Assembly (NCBI GenBank): GCA_965240325.2
Contig: OZ251224.1
Location: forward strand, 124,001-188,000
Length of the DNA stretch: 64,000 bases
Direction: 5' to 3'
Source: Rebecca billardiae RCC1528
Taxonomy: Eukaryota; Protista; Haptophyta
Shown: piece after piece, positions 4,512 to 14,419 of the stretch
How the letters are laid out: each line of letters opens with the position of its first letter
Numbering within the stretch: position 1 is the stretch's first letter
Notes under the pieces: model-generated
Seen by the model: only the letters and a program-made list of their open reading frames with translations
Databases searched by the model: none
Told to the model about the DNA's origin: nothing
Translations under genes and position numbers: made by a program

Positions 4512-5148
4512 TCAGCCGCCGCCGCCGCCGCCACGCCAACGCTGGAACCACCGGCGGCGCTGCCCGCCTTCCACTTGCTGCGCTGGCGGCTCGTCCGCCT
4601 TCGCTTTGCGCTCCGCAGCGGGCGCGCTCTTGCTCTCGGCCTCTTCCGCCTCCGAGCTGGGGGCGCTCGGAGGCGGCCATGGAGCGGCCTCAGCCTCGTC
4701 CGCGCCGTCCACGCCCTCGGCTGCCGAGCTCGCTCCCTCGGCAGCGCCGGCTGGAGACTCCGGGCTCGCCGGCTGGGCGGGAGGGCTGGCTGGTGGTGCT
4801 GCAGGTGGCGGCTGCTGCGCACGCGGGCGGGGTGGCGGCGCGGCCGGCGGGGGAGGCCGTGCGCGCGGGCGGGAGGGCTGCACTGGCGGTGCAGGGCGCT
4901 GTGCCCGGCGGAGCAGAGGTAGCGGCGGGGGCGGGGCAGCTGGCGGCTCCGGCTGTCGCGGGCCCGCCTGCTTGTCCCGGCGCGTGCGTAGAATGACTTG
5001 CTTGTACGCGCTGAGCGAGCGAGGCGTGTCCTCCGCCTGCCTGCTCGCAGCCGCCCGTGAGCGCTGCGCTGCGTTTGCACTCGCCGCCTGCGCGGCGCGC
5101 CCGGCCCCGGGCGCTGCCGATCCCGAGGTGGCGGCTGGTTGCGCGGCT

Positions 5149-5179
<31 letters not shown>

Positions 5180-8174
5180 GAGCGAACGCAACCGGCGGAG
5201 GGATGGCCGACTGCTCGAAAGCGGCGGTGGGCGCCTGCTGGACGCCCTCGTCGCCCTCTCCACCCTGCTGGGCAGCTGCCTGCTCCATCTCAGGCCCTGG
5301 CTCGGCATCGGCATTGGCGGCCTCCGCCTCATCCGCCGCCTCCGTCTCCGCCGCTGCTTCCGCCTCGGCCGCTGCCTTGGCTGCCTCAGCTTCGACCTCG
5401 GCCTTGGCTGCCGCCTCCGCCTCGGCGCGGGCCGCCTCCTCCGCTTCTGCCTCCGCCTTGGCTGCCGCCTCCGCCTCTGCAGCTGCCTTGGCAGCCTCTG
5501 CCTCCGCCTCCGCCTTGGCTGCCGCCTCCTCCGCCTCCGCCTTGGCTGCCGCCTCCTCTGCCTCCGCCTTGGCTGCCGCCTCTTCCGCCTCCGCCTTGGC
5601 AGCTGCCTCTTCCGCCTTCGCCTTGGCCGCCGCCTCCTCTGCCTCCGCCTTGGCTGCCGCCTCCGCCTTGGCTGCTGCCTCTTCCGCCTCCGCCTTGGCC
5701 GCCGCCTCCTCTGCCTCCGCCTTGGCTGCCGCCTCCGCCGCCTCCGCCTCGGCTGCCGCCTCCTCCGCCTCGGCATTGGCTGCAGCCTCCGCCTCCGCCT
5801 TGGCAGCCTCCGCCTCCGCCTTGGCTGCCGCCTCTTCCGCCTCCGCCTTGGCAGCTGCCTCTTCCGCCTTCGCCTTGGCCGCCGCCTCCTCTGCCTCCGC
5901 CTTGGCTGCCGCCTCCGCCTTGGCTGCTGCCTCTTCCGCCTCCGCCTTGGCCGCCGCCTCCTCTGCCTCCGCCTTGGCTGCCGCCTCCGCCGCCTCCGCC
6001 TCGGCTGCCGCCTCCTCCGCCTCGGCATTGGCTGCAGCCTCCGCCTCCGCCTTGGCAGCCTCCGCCTCCGCCTTGGCTGCCGCCTCTTCCGCCTCCGCCT
6101 TGGCAGCTGCCTCTTCCGCCTTCGCCTTGGCCGCCGCCTCCTCTGCCTCCGCCTTGGCCGCCGCCTCCTCCGCCTCGGCATTGGCTGCCGCCTCGGCCTC
6201 CGCCTCCGCCTTGGCTGCCGCCTCCGCCTTGGCTGCCGCCTCTTCCGCCTCCGCCTTGGCCGCCGCCTCCTCCGCCTCGGCATTGGCTGCCGCCTCGGCC
6301 TCCGCCTCCGCCTTGGCTGCCGCCTCCGCAGCCTCTGCAAGGGCTGCCTCCTCAGCCTCCTCCGCCTCCGCCTCTGCCTTCGCTGCAGCCTCCGCCTCGG
6401 CACGGGCCGCCTCCTCCTCCTCCTCCTTAGCTGCCGCCTCCTCCGCCTCCGCCTCCGCCTCCGCCTTGGCAGCAGCCTTGGCCGCCTCTGCCTCCGCCTC
6501 CGCCTTGGCTGCCACCTCGACACGGGCCGCCTCCTCCGCCTCCGCCTTGGCTGCAGCCTCCTCCGCCTCCGCCTTGGCTGCCGCCTCCTCCGTCTCGGCC
6601 TTGGCTGCCGCCTCCGCCTCGGCACGGGCCGCCTCCTCCGCCTCAGCCTTGGCTGCAGCCTCTGCCTCGGCACGGGCCGCCTCCTCTGCCTCTGCCTCTG
6701 CAGCAGCCTTGGCCGCCTCTGCCTCTGCCTCTGCCTTGGCGCTGGCTGCAGCCACCTCAGCAGCCTTGGCCTCCGCCTCTGCCTTGGCCTCCTCTTCAGC
6801 CGCAGCCTTGGCGGCTGCCTCCGCCTCGGCCTGCGCTGCTGCAGCTGCCTCTGCCTCCACCTTGGCTGCCTCTTCCGCCTCTCCCTCTGCTGCTTCCTCC
6901 TCTGGGCCAGCTCCAGCAGAGGTCTGTCTCGCGTCGTCTGATGCGCTCGGCTCCTCGTCTGCTGTCGCGTGGGCAGCTGCATTGGCCTCGGACTGGGTCT
7001 CTGGCCCTGCGTTGGGCTCCGCCATTCCCACTGTCACATTCGCGTCAGTGTCCTCTGCAGCAGCAGCCAGAGTTGGGGTGTACACGATGCCGACTGTGCG
7101 CATGGCCTTGTCCTCGCGCTCCGCATCCGGCACGTCGTCTTGGTCGCCTCGCCGCTTCTCGAGGATCTCGCCCACGGCGCCCATGGCGCTGCCCGCCGCG
7201 CGCGATGCGCCCTGCGCAGCCCCCCTCGCCACCTTGCCCAGCGCAGCGGCAGCGTCTCCGGCACCGCCGGGCGGCGTGGGCAGCTTGACGCTGCCTAGGC
7301 CGAACGGCAGCGGCCACGGCTCGCCTTCCGGACCCGCCGAGCCCTGAGAGGTGGCCGACGGCGGCGGCGTCGTTGGCGCATCATTGCGGCCGCCCTCTGC
7401 GCCGCCGTCCCCGTCGATGAAGACTGCCTTCACCACTGCACCCACGCCTGCAATGCCGACCAGTTCGATCACGTTGGGCATGGACGGCAGCAGTGAGAGT
7501 GGGAAGCCGCCTTTGGCTGACGGGGAGACCGCCGGCGGTGATGGCGATGGCAGCTTGGGCCCGAGCGCGGAGAAGGGCAGCCCCCGTGGCACGCGCGGCG
7601 CTGAGGGCAGGGATATCTGCGGCAGCTGTGGCAGCTGTGGCAGCGCCGCCGACTTGCCGCTGCTGGGCGAGTCCAGCGGCTCGGGCTCGGGCTCGGGCTC
7701 GGGGGCGGGGCTTGTCGGCGGAGCACTCGGCTCTGTCGGCGTCTCCGCCTCATCCTGCCCCCCTGTCTCCTTCACGCCGCACGCCTCGGGCAGCTGCACG
7801 TCGTCATCGCCCGCCAGCTGCAGGAAGGACTGCAGCTCGGCGCACTGCGCCTCCACGTCCTCGGAGGACCCCGCGGCAGCGGCGTCGGCGATGGAGGCGG
7901 CCCGTTTGCGAAGCTGCCGCCCGATGACCGTGTCATCTTCGTACGCCTTGCGCGAGCTGGCCACCGGCGAGGGCACGTCTGCTGCATGCGCGAGCCCACG
8001 GCCGGGCGGCGCACGCGCAGCGTGGTACGCGGGGAGTGCGGCAGCGGCACCGCCGACAAAAGAGCGGCGAAGCAGCGCTCCGGGCTGGTGCCGAGGCACC
8101 TTGCCCTGGGCCACCACCCGCTCCGCGCATAGCAGGGCCAACAGGGCTGTCAGCGTGAGTGCTGAGCCACGCAT
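4512..8174 (-). CDS. Secreted or organelle-targeted protein with a ~500-aa Ala/Glu/Lys (AEAEEAAAK) helical repeat
   Basis: Signal-peptide-like start MRGSALTLTALLALLCAERVVAQ (ATG 8174), hydrophobic segment VIELVGIAGVGAVVKAVFI, long open frame with synonymous variation among repeats. A possible 5' intron is unresolved. Confidence 0.7.
5380..6890 (-). repeat. Coding minisatellite (27-nt EAEEAAAKA units) with an internal 252-nt block duplication
   Basis: Sequence at 5629 recurs at 5881 (offset 252 nt = 84 aa). Confidence 0.9.
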
Positions 8175-8385
8175 GGCTTCACGACGGCGGACGGCCGTCG
8201 AGAGCTGCTCGAGCGAGCTGTTCAGCACCCAAGCTTGTGGCGATCGAGCCGTTTCACGATTCTCGCGCAGCAGCCTGGTGGAAGGAAGCCAGCGCTCCCG
8301 CTCCCGACTGCTCTCCAGCCGCAGCCCGCAGAGCAGCGCCAGCCGAGCGCGGCGCCAGGGCGAGGCCGTCGGGCGTCGAGGACTC

Positions 8386-10865
8386 ATGGCCGCAGCGAGC
8401 GGCAGCGCGCAGGCCGACGGCGCGCCGGGCGGCTCGGCGCCGAGCGAGGTGCTGCGCATGTGGACGGAGTGTCCGCGCCAGGGCAAGCTCCTCCGCGGCT
8501 TCGTCGCGCACAAGCTGCCCCTCGACGAGCTCAGCTCCGACGCGCTCGGCGTGGACGAGGCGGACCGGTTCACGCCCACCATGCTGATCGAGCGGCAGCT
8601 GCACGCGAAGCAGCCGATCGGGCTGGCGATCTCGCTGCTGATCGAGCTGCCGCGCGTGCCCGCCGGCCCGCCGCCCGCGCCGCGCGAGGCCGAGTGGGAC
8701 GACTGGGACGTCGCGTACGCGTGCGTGCCGTGCGCGGCGCCGCTGCCGCTCGGCGCGCGCGGCGCGGGCGCGCTCGCCTACTCGGAGCAGCTGCCGCCGC
8801 CGCAGCTGGTCGCGCAGTTCGTCGAGCGGTGCGTCGCGTTCTGGCGCGTCGAGAAGCCCGACGCCGCCGACGCCGCCGAGCCCGCCGGCAGCACCAACCA
8901 CCTGCGCGCCATCGGCGTGCACTGCAACACGGGCTTCAACCTGAGCGGCTACCTCATCTGCCACTTCCTCGTGATGACGCTGCACGTGCCCGCCGCGGCG
9001 GCGCTCGGCGCGTTCGCGGCGAGCCGGCCGCCGGGTATCTACGACCGCTCCTTCATCGAGGCGCTCTTCCGCTTCCACCGCCAGGTGCGGCGGCGCGCGC
9101 GCGCGGAGGGCCCACGCAGGGGCGCGCGGCGCGCGGCGGGCGCGCGCGTGCTGCGCGTGACCCGCCGCGCGCGCGCGCGCGTGAGCCGCGCCCTGCGCCG
9201 CGCCCGCAGGCCGTGCCCAGCCCGGACTCGGCGCGCCCGTCGGACTGGGCGCCGCCGCAGACCTGGCCGGCGTGGCACAGCCGGCTGCGCGAGCAGCAGA
9301 GCGCGGCGACGCTCACGGCCGCCGCGGCCGCGGTCGCGGCGGGCGGCGCCGCGGGCAAACGGCCGGCGGCGGCGGTGGCGGTGGCGAGCGGCGGCGGCGG
9401 CGGCGGCGGCGCGAGCGGCGGCGGTGCGCAGGCGCCGAGCGCGAGCGCCGCGGCCGGTGCTGCCGACGGCGCGGGGAGTGGCGCGGCCGCGCGCAAGCGG
9501 CCGGCGCCGCCGCCCGTGCCCGCCTTTGCGCAGCCCGCGCCGCCCGCCGCCGCAGCGAGCGGCGGCGGCGGCGCAGGCGCAGGCGCAGGCGCCAAGCGGC
9601 CTCGCGACGGCGGCGGCGACTCTGCGGTGGCGGCCGCCGCGCCGCTGCCCACGCTCGGCGGGCTGGGCGCGCACGCCGCCGCGCGGCCCCGCCCCGCCGG
9701 CAGCGGCGCCCCCCTCCGCCCCTTTGGCACGGCCGTGCACGGCGGCACGCGCGCGCGCGCCCGGCGCATCTGCTGCCAGCTGCTCGGGCTGCGGCCGCCG
9801 GCGGAGGGAGCGGCGGGCGCGGAGGGCGGCGCGGCGCCGGGCGCGGCCGACAGCGCGCTCGTGCCGCTGCTCGACGCGCGCGCGCCCGAGCTCAGCGCGC
9901 GTGCGCTGCACGGCGCTCTGCGCGAGGGCGGCGACGCCCGCTGGCTTGTGAGCTGGGAGCCGCACAGCGCGGCCTGCCGCGCCGCGCCGCAGGCCGCCGG
10001 CTGCGCCGCCGCGCCCGCGGCCGCCGCGCCGGCCGCGGCCGCGGCCCCTGGCGCGGCCGCGGGCGCGCCAAGCGGGCTGCCGCCCGCGCTGCCGTGCGCG
10101 CTGCTCTGGCTCGAGGGCCGAGCCTTCGCGCTGCTCAGCGCGCCCGTGCGCCCCGCGGCCGCGGCCGCGCCGCCGGGCGCGGACGGCGCGGCCGCACCGC
10201 CTCCGCGCGCGGACACCTTTGTGCTGCCCGGGCTGCAGCTGCCCGGCACGCCCGACCGCTCGCTGCTCGGGGGCACGCTGGTGCAGCCGCGCGCGCCCGG
10301 CGCGTCCGCCTCGCCCCGGCACGCGCCGCCCGCGCGCTGGCGGCTGTACTTGCGCGAGCTGCTCGCCCTCGGCGGCAAGGGCTGCGCACACGAGCCGCTC
10401 GAGCGCAGGCTGGCGCTGCTCGCCAAGCACGCGCTCGCGCCGCGCGCCTCGCTCGCGCGCGAGCAGACGCTGGGCGAGCCCGTCGCGCTGTACGCACACG
10501 ACCATTTCAGGCTGCGCCGCGCGACGGTGCGCGCGACGCGCGCGCGCGCCGCGCCGCACCGCGCCGTGTCCTCCAACCGACCCGCCGCCCCTCGCCCCCC
10601 CCGACCCGACCCGCGCTGCGCCGCGCCGCACTGCTGCCAGTTTGCGCTCGACGAGGTGGCGCCCGCACTGCGCGCGCTGCACGGGGTGGGCGGGCTGCGC
10701 TTCGTGCGCAAGGACGCGCCGCACCCGTGCGCGCGAGCGGCCGGCGCGGAGGCGGAGGGCGAGGCGGAGGCGGCGTGGCACGTGTGGAGCGAGGGCGCGG
10801 AGGGCGCGCTGCCCGAGGCGGAGCTGCGCGCGTGCGAGTGGCTGCGCCTGCCGCCCCCGGCGTAG
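8386..10865 (+). CDS. RNGTT-like bifunctional mRNA capping enzyme homolog (Cys-phosphatase + guanylyltransferase folds) with degenerate catalytic motifs; exons 8386-9084, 9210-10526, 10641-10865
   Basis: N-terminal WTECPRQGK..FVAHKLPL, IGVHCNTGFNLSGYLICHFL and FAASRPPGIY. C-terminal WLVSWE, LLGGTLV, LYLRELLALGG, EPVALY and HGVGGLRF follow the GTase motif order. GT-AG introns of 125 and 114 nt join the frames. Confidence 0.8.

Positions 10866-11132: not shown

Positions 11133-11177
<45 letters not shown>
11133..11177. repeat. (AG)n microsatellite, ~22 units
   Basis: Direct reading; lies between convergent genes. Confidence 0.97.
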
Positions 11178-11455: not shown

Positions 11456-14419
11456 TCAGGGCGCGCGCTCGCTCGCGCGCGGCGCGGCGCCGCCGAGGCG
11501 CGCGGGGTGCGCGGGCGAGCCGGGCGGCGGCGAGCCGGCCGACGGCGCGAGCTGCTGCGCGGGCTCGGCGGGCCCGCTGAAGCTGACGCCTCGCTCGTAC
11601 CACTCGAGCGCGTCGTCGTCCTCCGCCGCGTGCTCCGGCCCCTCCTCCCACGGCGCGTCGCGCACCGTCGGCATGTAGGAGCGCACGACCTCGTTGAAGC
11701 GCCACACGGGAGCGAGCTGGATGATGTCCGCCAGCCGGCCAAACCCGCGCATCGAGCGCATGCCGCCCGTGTACATGACGTGGAAGGCGTCGATCTGCGC
11801 GACGATCGTCTCGCGCGAGGCGAGCGGGCAGAGCGGGCGCACGTCCACGTCGGCGAGCGAGCGGCCGAGCGTGCGCCACAGGTAGAGCTCGAACGCGCAC
11901 CACAGCCGGTCGAAGAGCGTGTCTCCCAGCAGCACGAGCAGCCGGCGCGCGCGGCAGAGGTACACGACGGTGTGCGCGAGGCGCGGCGTGGGGTCCCACT
12001 GGATGCCCTCGGCGATCGAGGGGTCCCAGCAGACGACGTCGATCCAGATGCGCGGCGCGCGCCCCGTCGCCGCGCGGTGCTCCGCCGCGTACGCGCGCAG
12101 CGCCGCCACGCGCGCGCGCGGCGCGTCCTCGAACGAGTGGATCACGTGGCAGTCGACGACCTCGCGCTCGGCGGCGGCGGGCGCGTCCGCGCCGCCGGCG
12201 CCGTCCGGGGCGGCGGCGTCGTCGTCGAGGGCGAGCGCGGTGGCGCGCTGCACGCGCAGCTCGTGCGTCGACGCGGGCTCGCGCGGCCCCGCCGCCGCCG
12301 CGCGCGCGCGCTCGCCCAGCCCTCTGGGCGTGCGCCCGCGCGCGAGCGGCGCGTTGGCGAGCATCGCGCGCTCAATGTGGCCGAGCGCGTCCTCGCCCGA
12401 GAGGGTCACGCCGTGGTGCACGCGCAGGGCCTCGTCGACGAGGGTGCGCGGGACGGCGGGCGTGTCCGTGCCGTACCCGATCGCCGCGGCGATCACGAGC
12501 AGCGGGCGCGGCACGCTGTGCAGGTAGCTCCCCATCAGCCCGCGCGCGAGGCCGTCGAGCAGCCCGCCCACGCGCGCCAGCCCGCCCGCGCGCGCGCCCG
12601 ACACCGACGACACGGAGGAGGCGAGCTCGGAGAGCGCAGACGAGAGGCGCGCGGGCACGCGCACCCACGCCCAGCGCGCGCCGGCGGTGCCGAGCGCGGC
12701 GCCGGCGAGCCTCAGCGCCGCGCCGGCGAGCCGCCGCTCGGGCCACCCGCCCGGCGGCTGCGCCAGCCCGCTCAGCGCGAGCAGCGCGCCAAAGCACGCC
12801 GTCTCGGCGAGCGCGCGCGAGCGCGGCCGCGCGTGCGCCGCTCGCACCGCGCGCTCGAGCAGCGCGACAATCTCCGAGCGCGAGCGCACGCCCGCGCCGT
12901 CGAGCGGCTTCGAGTCGTACGCCGAGCGGCGGCCGAGCTCGTTCTTGCCCGAGAGGCGGCCGTAGTACGTCTGCGCGCCCGCCGCGCTCGCCACGCTCGC
13001 CGCGCCCGCCTGCACACTCTCGACGTCGGACACGGAGCGGCGGCGCAGCGCGTGCGACTCAGACTTGCCCGCGGTCGCGAGTACCGCCTGGTGGTAGGTC
13101 TGGCGCAGCAGCAGCGCGACCGTGTCGGCGGGGACGGTAAGCTCGGGCGAGAGCAGGAGCAGGTGGCGCACGCGCCGCCCGCCCGCCGCGCTCGCCGCCA
13201 CGCCCACCCACGCGCCGCCCATCCCTGTGAACGCCTCCGCGGTGCTCGGCAGCACCGTCATCAGCGCGACCACGTCGTACGGCTTCACGTAGCCCTCGAG
13301 GTAGGAGACGATGTCCGCGTCCGCGCCGAGCGCGTCGAGGCCCTCGCGCGCGAAGGTGTCGGCGGTGGCGCCGCAGAACGTCTCGAAGTACCACTGCTTC
13401 GTGCACCGCGCGGGCAGCTCGCCCGCGCACAGCCGGCGCCACAGCCCCTCCAGCCCCAGGAACTGCGCGTCGGCGAGGTAGCGCATCAGCGGGCAGCGCG
13501 TGCGCATCGCGAAGGAGCGCGCGAGCTGCATCGGCAGCAGCGGCACCGCGGCGCGCGAGGTGACGCGCAGCTCGACGCCGTGCGCGAAGCACCACGAGTA
13601 CACCGCCTCCGCCGCGGCCATGTCGAACTGGTTGTTCACCGCCTGCCGCCGCGCGGCGCGAGCGAGCGCGCGGGGCGCGGCGGCGGCGCGAGCGGCGGCG
13701 GCGCGTCGTCCGCGGGTGCGCAGAGGCCGTCAGCGCGCGCGTGCGCGCGCGCGCGGCGCGGCGCGCGCGGCGCGCGGCGCGGCGCGGCGCGCGCACAGAG
13801 TCGGGCCGCCAGCCGCCCTCCCCGTCGCGCTCGAGCCCGCCCTGCACCGCCACGGTCGCCACCTTCTCGCGCACGAGCTCGGGCGCGCTGCCAATCACGT
13901 CCGCAAAGTCGCGCATGGAGGAGATGAGGAGCATGGTGACGGAGCGGCGGTGCGCGGTGCGCAGCGCGTCAAGGAGCAGCGTGTCGCCGGGCACCAGCCG
14001 CGCCGTGTCCACCTCGTCGTACCCCTCGAGCTTGTACTCGTGCGGCTGCGTGGTCGTCGCAGAGCCGCGCGAGCCGACGCCGACCGGGATGTCCTCCGTG
14101 TCGACGAGCTGGAAGGCGGCGAGGGCGAGCTTGGCGCGCGCCTCGGGCTGCCCGCCGCCGTTGGCGATCACGGCGCGCACGCGCACCGTGCCCTGCTTGT
14201 GCAGCACCGCCGCCACCAGCAGCGCCTGCCGGGCGGGGGAAGCGAGCGCGCATCGCCAAGCGCGCGCGGCGTGTGAGGGCAGCGCCGAGCGGCGCGGCGC
14301 GCGCGGCGGCTGACGCGCACCTTGAGATCATCCGGGTCCGGCCCAGGGTCGGTCACGATGATCAGCTCGAGCGGAGGCCGGCCGCGCAGGCGGGCCAGCC
14401 ACTCGGCTGGGCCCCTCAT
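11456..14419 (-). CDS. Nucleoside-hydrolase-fold protein (XopQ/HopQ1-like) fused to a C-terminal TIR/HET-like domain; exons 14419-14321, 14225-13797, 13642-11456
   Basis: IIVTDPGPDPDD Asp motif, VAVQGG, spliced PDSAVNNQFD and KPYD. C-terminal DCHVIHSF..RIWIDVVC..LLVLLG..DRLWCAFELY. GT-AG introns of 95 and 154 nt give one continuous frame. Confidence 0.8.

What the first reader, a model, noticed from the sequence alone, without database searches (positions are those of the whole stretch)
8386..10865. mRNA-capping enzyme homolog with both catalytic sites apparently altered
Seen: the phosphatase loop reads HCNTGFNL where RNGTT has HCTHGFNR, so the CX5R Arg is lost. GTase motif I reads VSWEPHS where RNGTT has VSWKADG, so the GMP-accepting Lys is lost. 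Motifs III (LLGGTLV vs LLDGE) and IV (GGLRF vs DGLIF) lack their acidic residues. The frame, introns and scaffold residues are intact. Inference: a maintained pseudo-enzyme paralog, perhaps a Pol II CTD/RNA-binding adaptor or regulator of the active capping enzyme.
Basis: partly seen in the sequence, partly recalled or inferred. Interest (0 to 1): 0.7.

Follow-up and report, generated by a model that had tools for sequence, protein, structure and literature searches.

The report
Conserved dead copy of mRNA-capping enzyme
This GC-rich haptophyte alga keeps an intact, conserved gene built like the animal/plant mRNA-capping enzyme but lacking the key catalytic residues of both active sites and its last domain, while separate genes supply an intact capping guanylyltransferase and a candidate triphosphatase; it looks like an unstudied non-catalytic relative of a core RNA enzyme.

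Summary
The gene has three exons (8386-9084, 9210-10526, 10641-10862).

- **N-terminal domain:** a true homologue of the RNGTT/Mce1 cysteine-phosphatase RNA triphosphatase (PDB E 1e-15). Its P-loop reads HCNTGFNLSG, so the CX5R arginine is Leu.
- **C-terminal domain:** invisible to Pfam and to single-sequence search. It is nevertheless a very diverged guanylyltransferase nucleotidyl-transferase domain. This rests on profile-profile chaining through prymnesiophyte orthologues (98.3% then 99.8%), an own-genome profile search that hits only this gene and the canonical enzyme, and Foldseek top hits that are all capping enzymes.
- **Catalytic residues:** in the alignment, motif I Lys is Glu, and motifs III, IV and V lack their acidic or basic residues.
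- **Missing domain:** the OB domain carrying motif VI is absent.

Orthologues with the same losses and the same intron positions occur in at least three other Pavlovales sources. A wider family spans Chrysochromulina and Prymnesium.

The genome also holds an intact stand-alone guanylyltransferase with an OB domain, a candidate tunnel-type triphosphatase, and two Arg-bearing phosphatase relatives.

Loss of activity is inferred from sequence only. Expression could not be tested because no RNA run was listed. Any adaptor or regulator role is speculative. I found no description of such a protein in four paper searches.

The parts
8386..9084 (+). Exon 1 (233 aa): RNGTT-type cysteine-phosphatase (RNA triphosphatase-like) domain
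   Evidence: phmmer against PDB gives 2c46, 1i9s and 8p4b at E 1e-15 to 1e-14. Pfam DSPc scores only 25.5 bits, below its cut-off. It is 57-62% identical to orthologues P0001, P0002 and P0003. GC3 is 0.99 against GC2 of 0.53.
8920..8949 (+). P-loop HCNTGFNLSG: Cys kept, CX5R Arg replaced by Leu (CTG at 8941-8943)
   Evidence: Aligned with HCTHGFNRTG. In alignment A10 the Arg is present in every canonical enzyme and in L003 and L004, and is L, V or T in every family member.
9085..9209 (+). Intron 1 (125 nt, GT...AG), directly after FRFHRQ
   Evidence: An intron sits at the same position in L007, L008 and L009, with GT or GC donors and AG acceptors. The reading frame shifts from window frame 1 to frame 3 across it.
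9210..9701 (+). Exon 2, 5' part: low-complexity Ala/Gly-rich linker with conserved WxPPxxWPxWH, PPVPxFAxP and a basic KRPR patch (NLS-like, inferred)
   Evidence: Alignments A1 and A4. The PPxW motif is shared with canonical RNGTT-type proteins (A10).
9702..10526 (+). Exon 2, 3' part: degenerate guanylyltransferase nucleotidyl-transferase domain (N-terminal helix, motifs I, III, IIIa)
   Evidence: hhalign of A2 against the prymnesiophyte family A7 gives probability 98.3%, E 2e-14. A7 against canonical enzymes gives 99.8%, E 1e-27. A2 against canonical enzymes gives 63.6%, E 6.7e-5. An own-genome search with A7 hits window 10323-10520 at E 4.7e-7.
9948..9968 (+). Motif I equivalent VSWEPHS: Glu (9957-9959) at the position of the GMP-accepting Lys. 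It is followed by a ~40-aa Ala-rich insert.
   Evidence: Alignment A5. Orthologues read AAVEPRA and VALEP. Prymnesiophyte members read WKASG, WKAES, WKARG, WKPTG or WRTLG.
10260..10283 (+). Motif III equivalent SLLGGTLV (canonical TLLDGELV): both acidic residues lost
   Evidence: A5 and the hhalign alignments.
10335..10358 (+). Motif IIIa equivalent RWRLYLRE (canonical RYLIYD), followed by the conserved helix PLERRLALLAKHALAPR
   Evidence: A5. This is the best-conserved block. It is the part hit by Ceg1 3kyh_C and by the genome-wide A7 search.
10527..10640 (+). Intron 2 (114 nt, GT...AG, in frame and without stops by chance in 80% GC DNA)
   Evidence: An intron sits at the same position in L007 and L008. 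In L008 it holds a poly-C run and an assembly gap, so it cannot be coding there.
10641..10862 (+). Exon 3 (74 aa): motif IV equivalent GGLRF (10689-10703), motif V equivalent WHVW (10776-10787), conserved C-terminal helix PEAELRACEWL (10812-10847). The stop codon TAG is at 10863-10865. No OB domain.
   Evidence: A2 and A5. PF03919 is found only on contig 22.

Best explanation
The gene encodes a roughly 746-residue protein with the domain order of the animal/plant-type bifunctional capping enzyme RNGTT. That order is a cysteine-phosphatase triphosphatase-like domain, a PPxW linker, and a guanylyltransferase nucleotidyl-transferase domain.

The residues that perform catalysis are gone. The P-loop Arg is Leu. 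The motif I Lys is Glu. The motif III and IV acidic residues and the motif V lysines are lost. The OB domain with motif VI is missing altogether.

It belongs to a conserved family found across haptophytes. In prymnesiophytes the C-domain still scores as PF01331 and mostly keeps the Lys. In Pavlovales it has diverged much further.

Capping in this organism is most likely done by other genes: a stand-alone Ceg1-type guanylyltransferase with an OB domain, plus a candidate tunnel-type (TTM) triphosphatase.

Most likely mechanism, which is inference and not shown here: the protein is a nuclear, non-catalytic module. It keeps the capping-enzyme folds as binding surfaces, for example for the transcribing polymerase, the RNA 5' end or the active capping proteins, and so recruits, competes with or regulates them.

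Shown here: homology, residue losses, conservation, and the presence of an intact guanylyltransferase (with OB domain) elsewhere in the genome. Inferred: loss of both activities, nuclear location, and a binding or regulatory role.
For: N-domain homology and Arg-to-Leu. It is the same in all family members (45 of the P-loops scanned lack Arg).

C-domain homology:
- hhalign chain of 98.3% then 99.8%, and a direct comparison at E 6.7e-5.
- PF01331 scores 55-85 bits in prymnesiophyte orthologues.
- A search of the whole 72-Mb genome with the family profile finds only the canonical enzyme and this gene (E 4.7e-7).
- An AlphaFold model built with a 17-sequence alignment (pLDDT 74, pTM 0.75) has as its 21 best Foldseek hits only capping guanylyltransferase entries (1p16, 8p4a, 3rtx, 4pz6, 3s24, 3kyh, 1ckm).

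Motif table. No OB domain.

Conservation:
- Orthologues P0003 (Pavlovales sp. CCMP2436), P0001, P0002 and P0004.
- Conserved intron positions.
- YN00 dN/dS of 0.28-0.40 where it could be computed, and NG86 below 1 in all pairs.
- GC3 of 0.94-0.99 in the proposed frame.
- The family forms its own clade, with support 92/88.

Other capping genes in this genome (intact guanylyltransferase; triphosphatase only a candidate):
- L001: PF01331 at 165 bits plus PF03919 at 60 bits, with KTDG, LLDGE, DGIIF and LKWKP.
- L006: a tunnel-type triphosphatase candidate.
- L003 and L004: phosphatases with an intact CX5R.
Against: - No activity assay exists. The catalytic Cys and the rest of the P-loop are strictly conserved, which could mean a residual or altered chemistry.
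- Expression is untested: no RNA run was listed.
- For pairs that include this window, the C-domain shows no significant excess of third-position change. This is because third positions are saturated and confined to G/C, so selection on that domain rests mainly on block conservation and on the cross-class family.
- Pfam and single-sequence searches do not see the C-domain.
- The AlphaFold model used an alignment that contained canonical enzymes, so the fold match is partly circular. The 3-sequence alignment failed (pLDDT 37).
- Nothing tested here speaks to binding partners.
Confidence: 0.8

Rival explanations
1. The protein is still an enzyme with non-canonical chemistry. For example, the N-domain could use its conserved Cys on a phosphorylated or other substrate without the P-loop Arg, or the prymnesiophyte members that keep the motif I Lys could still be guanylylated.
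For: His-Cys, Gly, Asn and S/T-Gly of the P-loop are invariant across the whole family. Most prymnesiophyte members keep WK..G and the motif III Glu. One lineage (P0009/P0170, L011) joins the same Arg-less N-domain to a canonical guanylyltransferase with an OB domain.
Against: In this gene and all Pavlovales orthologues the Lys is Glu, and motifs III, IV and V and the OB domain are all lost. From established knowledge of cysteine phosphatases and covalent nucleotidyl transferases, the P-loop Arg, the motif I Lys, the motif V lysines and motif VI are each needed for activity. No compensating conserved Lys or Arg was seen in the alignments.
Confidence: 0.1
2. It is a decaying or unexpressed gene relic (pseudogene) whose open frame persists only because 80% GC DNA has few stop codons.
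For: Long open frames occur in all six frames here. The C-domain evolves fast, with a Pavlovales branch length of 1.57. Pairs that include this window show no significant codon-position asymmetry in the C-domain. No RNA evidence is available.
Against: Orthologues in at least three other Pavlovales sources keep the same frame, the same two intron positions with splice signals, and blocks such as LLWLEG, PDRSLL, RWRLxxRE, LERRLAxL and AELRACEWL, while the introns differ in length and base composition. The family reaches prymnesiophytes. Extreme GC3 with much lower GC2 marks the proposed frame. dN/dS is below 1 in all pairs.
Confidence: 0.05
3. Only the N-terminal phosphatase-like domain is real. 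On this view the C-terminal 550 residues are a low-complexity tail whose likeness to guanylyltransferase motifs is chance.
For: There is no Pfam hit at E<=1 and no PDB hit by phmmer. Ala/Gly/Pro-rich inserts are present. The first AlphaFold run failed.
Against: The profile chain at 98.3% and 99.8%, the direct comparison at E 6.7e-5 in the correct register, the genome-wide search at E 4.7e-7, PF01331 in orthologues, and Ceg1 as the only non-low-complexity PDB hit, in the right region.
Confidence: 0.02

Closest known systems
RNGTT / Mce1 (animal and plant bifunctional mRNA-capping enzyme: cysteine-phosphatase RNA triphosphatase fused to guanylyltransferase)
   Same: It has the same domain order. 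The N-domain is the best PDB match (E 1e-15), with WxxCPRxG, HCxxGxN.(S/T)G and RPPGIY kept. It has the PPxW linker. The nucleotidyl-transferase fold has all motif positions alignable.
   Different: The P-loop Arg, the motif I Lys and Asp, the motif III Asp and Glu, the motif IV Asp and the motif V lysines are replaced. The OB domain with motif VI is absent. There is an extra EWxDWDV insert in the N-domain, Ala-rich inserts in the C-domain, and a family-specific C-terminal helix (AELRACEWL).
Ceg1/Cgt1-type stand-alone guanylyltransferase (fungi; here L001 and Prymnesium parvum AB1Y20_002261)
   Same: The nucleotidyl-transferase domain is homologous. The family profile matches this group as well as it matches the RNGTT type (E 9e-29 against 1.5e-25).
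   Different: Those proteins keep every catalytic motif and the OB domain, and have no phosphatase-like domain. They form a separate clade, with support 99/97.
Snurportin-1 m3G-cap-binding domain
   Same: From established knowledge, it is a catalytically dead guanylyltransferase-like fold reused as a binding module. It is the next group of Foldseek hits after the capping enzymes (3gjx, 5dis, 1xk5; E 1.6e-3 to 1e-2).
   Different: There is no detectable sequence relation, no phosphatase-like domain, and it has an importin-beta-binding domain instead. Cap binding by the alga's protein is untested, and most nucleotide-contacting positions are changed.
Pseudophosphatases of the STYX type
   Same: Both are cysteine-phosphatase folds kept without catalytic competence.
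   Different: From established knowledge, STYX-type proteins usually lose the Cys and keep the Arg, and so still bind phosphate. Here the Cys is kept and the Arg is lost, which argues against simple phosphate trapping.
DUSP11/PIR1 and baculovirus BVP RNA 5'-phosphatases
   Same: They belong to the same subfamily of cysteine phosphatases (PDB 4nyh, 1yn9; E 2e-5 to 9e-4). This genome has two such genes with an intact CX5R (L003, L004).
   Different: They are much weaker matches than RNGTT, they have no guanylyltransferase-like domain, and they keep the Arg.

Membership tests
Active RNGTT-type bifunctional capping enzyme | N-terminal cysteine-phosphatase domain homologous to the Mce1 triphosphatase | tested here: met
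   phmmer against PDB, E 1e-15; alignment A10.
Active RNGTT-type bifunctional capping enzyme | P-loop HCx5R(S/T) with both the Cys nucleophile and the Arg | tested here: not met
   HCNTGFNLSG: Cys is present, Arg is Leu.
Active RNGTT-type bifunctional capping enzyme | Guanylyltransferase motif I KxDG with the Lys nucleophile | tested here: not met
   WEPHS aligns with WKADG. Glu is at the Lys position and His at the Asp position.
Active RNGTT-type bifunctional capping enzyme | Motifs III (DGE), IV (DG) and V (KxK) with their charged residues | tested here: not met
   GGT, GG and HVW sit at those positions.
Active RNGTT-type bifunctional capping enzyme | C-terminal OB domain with motif VI (PF03919) | tested here: not met
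   There is no Pfam match. The protein ends about 25 residues after motif V. PF03919 is found only on contig 22.
Covalent nucleotidyl-transferase fold, capping-enzyme branch (PF01331 homologues) | Significant sequence or profile similarity to PF01331 members over the motif I-V region | tested here: met
   Not met by direct Pfam scan. Met by profile-profile and transitive tests and by the fold search (which is partly circular).
Haptophyte Arg-less, OB-less capping-enzyme-like family (defined here) | HC[VALN]TG[VIFY]N[VLT][AST]G P-loop, EWxDWDV insert, PPxWH and PxVPxF linker motifs, a degenerate nucleotidyl-transferase domain, and a C-terminal (E)AEL helix | tested here: met
   Alignments A1, A4, A5 and A10. 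Profile search scores. The family forms a clade with support 92/88.
Processed or decaying pseudogene | Frame disruptions, loss of splice signals, no conservation beyond neutral expectation | tested here: not met
   The frame is open, both introns are GT-AG at conserved positions, and blocks are conserved across species. Expression was not testable.

The most novel reading that the evidence does not exclude
The gene may represent an old, widely spread family of non-catalytic capping-enzyme paralogues. Look-alikes occur in the glaucophyte Cyanophora and perhaps in the rhizarian Spongospora. On this reading the family acts as a reader or regulator at the 5' end of nascent transcripts, for example by binding triphosphate or capped ends or the polymerase, much as snurportin reuses the same fold. 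That would add a new layer of control to capping in organisms that run a fungal-type capping system alongside a relic of the animal/plant type.
Probability: 0.15. Interest if true: 0.75.

Novelty: new variant of a known kind. Interest (0 to 1): 0.55.

Why it matters
Capping enzymes are essential and strongly conserved. The split between fused cysteine-phosphatase systems and separate tunnel-type triphosphatase systems has been used as a marker of deep eukaryote relationships (my recollection of the literature, not checked here).

This alga and its relatives appear to carry both:
- a working fungal-type set (the triphosphatase is only a candidate);
- a conserved copy of the animal/plant architecture that, judged from sequence, is disabled.

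That offers a natural test of what the capping-enzyme folds do apart from catalysis, such as polymerase docking, 5'-end binding or regulation. It also bears on how capping systems were replaced during evolution. In addition, it warns that automatic names such as 'mRNA capping' or 'adenylation domain-containing protein', given to orthologues, overstate function.

Tried and rejected
- **Pfam on each exon:** only a sub-threshold DSPc match for exon 1 and nothing for the C-domain.
- **phmmer of the C-domain against PDB:** nothing relevant.
- **Three-sequence profile against PDB:** mainly an Ala-rich false hit (Amuc_1100), with Ceg1 at E 0.18.
- **hhalign of the three-sequence profile against the single own-genome guanylyltransferase:** correct register, but probability only 2.8%.
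- **AlphaFold with three sequences:** failed, pLDDT 37.
- **Alignment of exon fragments as separate rows (A3):** misaligned, so discarded.
- **RNA evidence:** The look-up of sequencing runs listed no run, so read laying was not used and expression and splicing are untested.
- **NG86 dN/dS:** inflated by GC3 near 1. YN00 failed for most pairs.
- **Codon-position test:** not significant for C-domain pairs that include this window.
- **Origin of the C-domain (RNGTT type or haptophyte Ceg1 type):** could not be decided. hhalign scores are similar and the deep nodes of the tree are unresolved.
- **Is the canonical guanylyltransferase fused to an N-domain in this genome?** No. There is no N-domain match near contig 22.
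- **Four paper searches:** nothing on inactive capping-enzyme paralogues or haptophyte capping.
- **Earlier scan notes:** nothing bearing on this gene.
- **Joined model:** Exons were used by reference. Two references (9210-10862 and 9702-10862) read through the in-frame intron 2 unspliced.
Full report
**Gene model**

The region is about 80% GC, so long open frames occur in all six frames and prove nothing by themselves.

The + strand model is as follows.
- Exon 1 runs 8386-9084 and ends with ...FRFHRQ.
- Intron 1 is 9085-9209 (GT...AG).
- Exon 2 is 9210-10526.
- Intron 2 is 10527-10640 (GT...AG, 114 nt, in frame).
- Exon 3 is 10641-10862, followed by TAG.

The model is confirmed by comparison with three other sources:
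- Pavlovales sp. CCMP2436 (protein P0003, DNA L008);
- a JGI metagenome contig (P0001, L007);
- two Logan contigs (P0002, L009 and L010).

All have an intron directly after FRFHRQ. The two sources that extend far enough also have one after the DxFRxRRxx block. In L008 the second intron contains a poly-C run and an assembly gap, so it cannot be coding there. In the window's frame, GC3 is 0.94-0.99 and GC2 is 0.53-0.74.

Two references read through the in-frame second intron unspliced.

**N-terminal domain**

phmmer of exon 1 against all PDB sequences gives human and mouse capping enzyme (2c46, 1i9s, 8p4b) at E 1e-15 to 1e-14. The RNA phosphatases BVP and DUSP11/PIR1 follow far behind, at 2e-5 to 9e-4.

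The alignment places HCNTGFNLSG on HCTHGFNRTG, so the CX5R arginine is leucine. WxxCPRxG, His-Cys, Gly, Asn, S/T-Gly and RPPGIY are kept. Pfam sees only a sub-threshold DSPc match.

**C-terminal domain**

Pfam (E<=1) and phmmer against PDB find nothing. PF01331 searched over the whole genome finds only contig 22.

A word search found one orthologue and a second search found two more. A profile of these, searched against 1.84 billion representatives, brought in a family of 520-660-residue proteins. They come from Chrysochromulina parva, C. tobinii, Prymnesium parvum and Prymnesium sp., plus many marine contigs. Their C-domains score 55-85 bits on PF01331, where the cut-off is 29.6.

Profile-profile comparison gives:

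| Comparison | Probability | E-value |
|---|---|---|
| Pavlovales C-domain vs prymnesiophyte family | 98.3% | 2e-14 |
| Prymnesiophyte family vs canonical guanylyltransferases | 99.8% | 1e-27 |
| Pavlovales C-domain vs canonical guanylyltransferases | 63.6% | 6.7e-5 (correct register) |

Further support:
- The prymnesiophyte profile, searched over the 72-Mb genome in six frames, hits exactly two places. These are the canonical enzyme (E 8e-15) and window 10323-10520 (E 4.7e-7).
- An AlphaFold model made with 17 aligned sequences reaches pLDDT 74 and pTM 0.75. Its 21 best Foldseek hits are all capping guanylyltransferase entries, followed by snurportin-1 and DNA ligases.
- That alignment contained canonical enzymes, so I treat the fold match as supporting evidence only. 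The three-sequence model had failed.

**Catalytic residues (alignment A5)**

| Motif | Canonical | Prymnesiophyte members | This gene | Pavlovales orthologues |
|---|---|---|---|---|
| I | WKADG / EKTDG | WKASG, WKAES, WKARG, WKPTG, WRTLG | WEPHS | VEPRA, LEP |
| III | TLLDGELV | LVLAGEVV | SLLGGTLV | – |
| IIIa | RYLIYD | WRLLCYD | WRLYLRE | – |
| IV | DGLIF | RGLIF, KGLVF (DGLII in Prymnesium) | GGLRF | – |
| V | LKWKP | LDWRR, LEWRK | WHVW | – |

No member has an OB domain. In this genome PF03919 occurs only on contig 22.

All Pavlovales members carry Glu at the Lys position. All family members lack the P-loop Arg, with L, V or T in its place. The motif V and OB-domain losses add to them.

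**Is it maintained?**

- N-domain identity among the four Pavlovales sources is 57-76%. C-domain identity is 48-57%. Sharply conserved blocks are separated by variable Ala-rich inserts.
- Third codon positions are saturated within the G/C alphabet (p about 0.4). The introns differ in length and base composition between species; I did not try to align them.
- dN/dS is below 1 in all pairs by NG86, which overestimates it here. It is 0.28-0.40 by YN00 where that could be computed.
- The excess of third-position change is significant for the N-domain in most pairs. For the C-domain it is significant only for L007-L008.
- The family forms its own clade, with support 92/88, and the Pavlovales branch is long.
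- I could not test expression, because no RNA run was listed.

**The rest of the capping set in this genome**

- Contig 22 encodes a stand-alone guanylyltransferase. It has KTDG, LLDGE, DGIIF, LKWKP and an OB domain with motif VI (PF01331 at 165 bits, PF03919 at 60 bits).
- Contig 1 has a candidate tunnel-type triphosphatase (PF02940 at 26 bits, with VEIEARI and FEIEVEY strands).
- Contigs 37 and 26 encode RNGTT-like phosphatase domains with an intact CX5R, and no guanylyltransferase part was seen in them.
- Other haptophytes likewise have stand-alone guanylyltransferases of about 400-460 residues.

The window's gene is therefore an extra gene, not the organism's capping enzyme.

**Interpretation**

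The protein is best read as a conserved non-catalytic derivative of a fused capping enzyme. Retention of the two folds, of the linker motifs, of a basic KRPR patch and of a family-specific C-terminal helix suggests a nuclear binding or regulatory role. Nothing here tests that.

The strict conservation of the P-loop Cys is unexplained. It keeps a small probability for residual or altered chemistry.

Whether the C-domain descends from an RNGTT-type or a Ceg1-type ancestor is unresolved. The N-domain and the PPxW linker are of the RNGTT type.

**Novelty**

Automatic annotation calls orthologues 'hypothetical protein', 'mRNA capping' or 'adenylation domain-containing protein'. Four full-text searches found no paper on inactive capping-enzyme paralogues or on haptophyte capping. 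I rate it a new variant of a known kind.

Noticed in passing
L011:3048-5412 (NCBI GCA_035092305.1, contig JAYKCD010009541.1); proteins P0009 and P0170: One unidentified lineage joins the same Arg-less phosphatase-like domain (HCVTGINTAG) and linker to a canonical guanylyltransferase (EKTDG, LLDGELI) followed by an OB domain. It is the only such fusion cluster found. It may be a recombinant of the two gene types, or a picture of the ancestral state.
   Followed up: partly
Proteins P0018 (Cyanophora paradoxa), P0105 (Spongospora subterranea), P0046 (Hirondellea gigas), P0035 (Anaeramoeba flamelloides): Degenerate capping-enzyme-like proteins also occur outside haptophytes. Cyanophora has HD in place of HC and TWAPRG at motif I, and shares the EWxDWD insert. 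Spongospora has HCCSGFNLTG and TWRTVS and no OB domain. The amphipod has HCMQGFNLTG and WISDG. Whether they are one old family or repeated losses is open.
   Followed up: partly
G000 contig 37 (L003:1156-2229) and contig 26 (L004:1150-2214): Two further RNGTT/PIR1-like cysteine-phosphatase genes have an intact CX5R (HCHYGFNRTG, HCTHGVNRTG) and long low-complexity tails. Their roles, in capping or in RNA 5'-end processing, are unknown.
   Followed up: partly
G000 contig 1 (L006:1120-2226, minus strand): A small tunnel-type (TTM) RNA triphosphatase candidate, just over the Pfam cut-off (26 bits). Together with the stand-alone guanylyltransferase it suggests a fungal/protozoan-type capping system in this alga.
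   Followed up: partly
L008:4964-5248 (Pavlovales sp. CCMP2436): The deposited gene model for P0003 uses an acceptor 15 nt downstream of the one conserved in the other species, skipping YLLEQ. The intron holds a long poly-C run and an assembly gap.
   Followed up: yes
window 4512-8177, minus strand: A divergently oriented long ORF has a signal-peptide-like start (MRGSALTLTALLALLCAERVVAQG) and several hundred residues of Ala/Glu/Lys repeats (AEAEEAAAKAEAE). There is no Pfam match. Its mechanical ORF overlaps the start of the studied gene only because stop codons are rare.
   Followed up: partly
window 11133-11177: A (GA)n microsatellite of about 22 units lies in the short AT-richer spacer downstream of the gene.
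   Followed up: no
window 11456-13639, minus strand: A 727-residue ORF converges on the studied gene. It has non-repetitive sequence and no Pfam match.
   Followed up: partly
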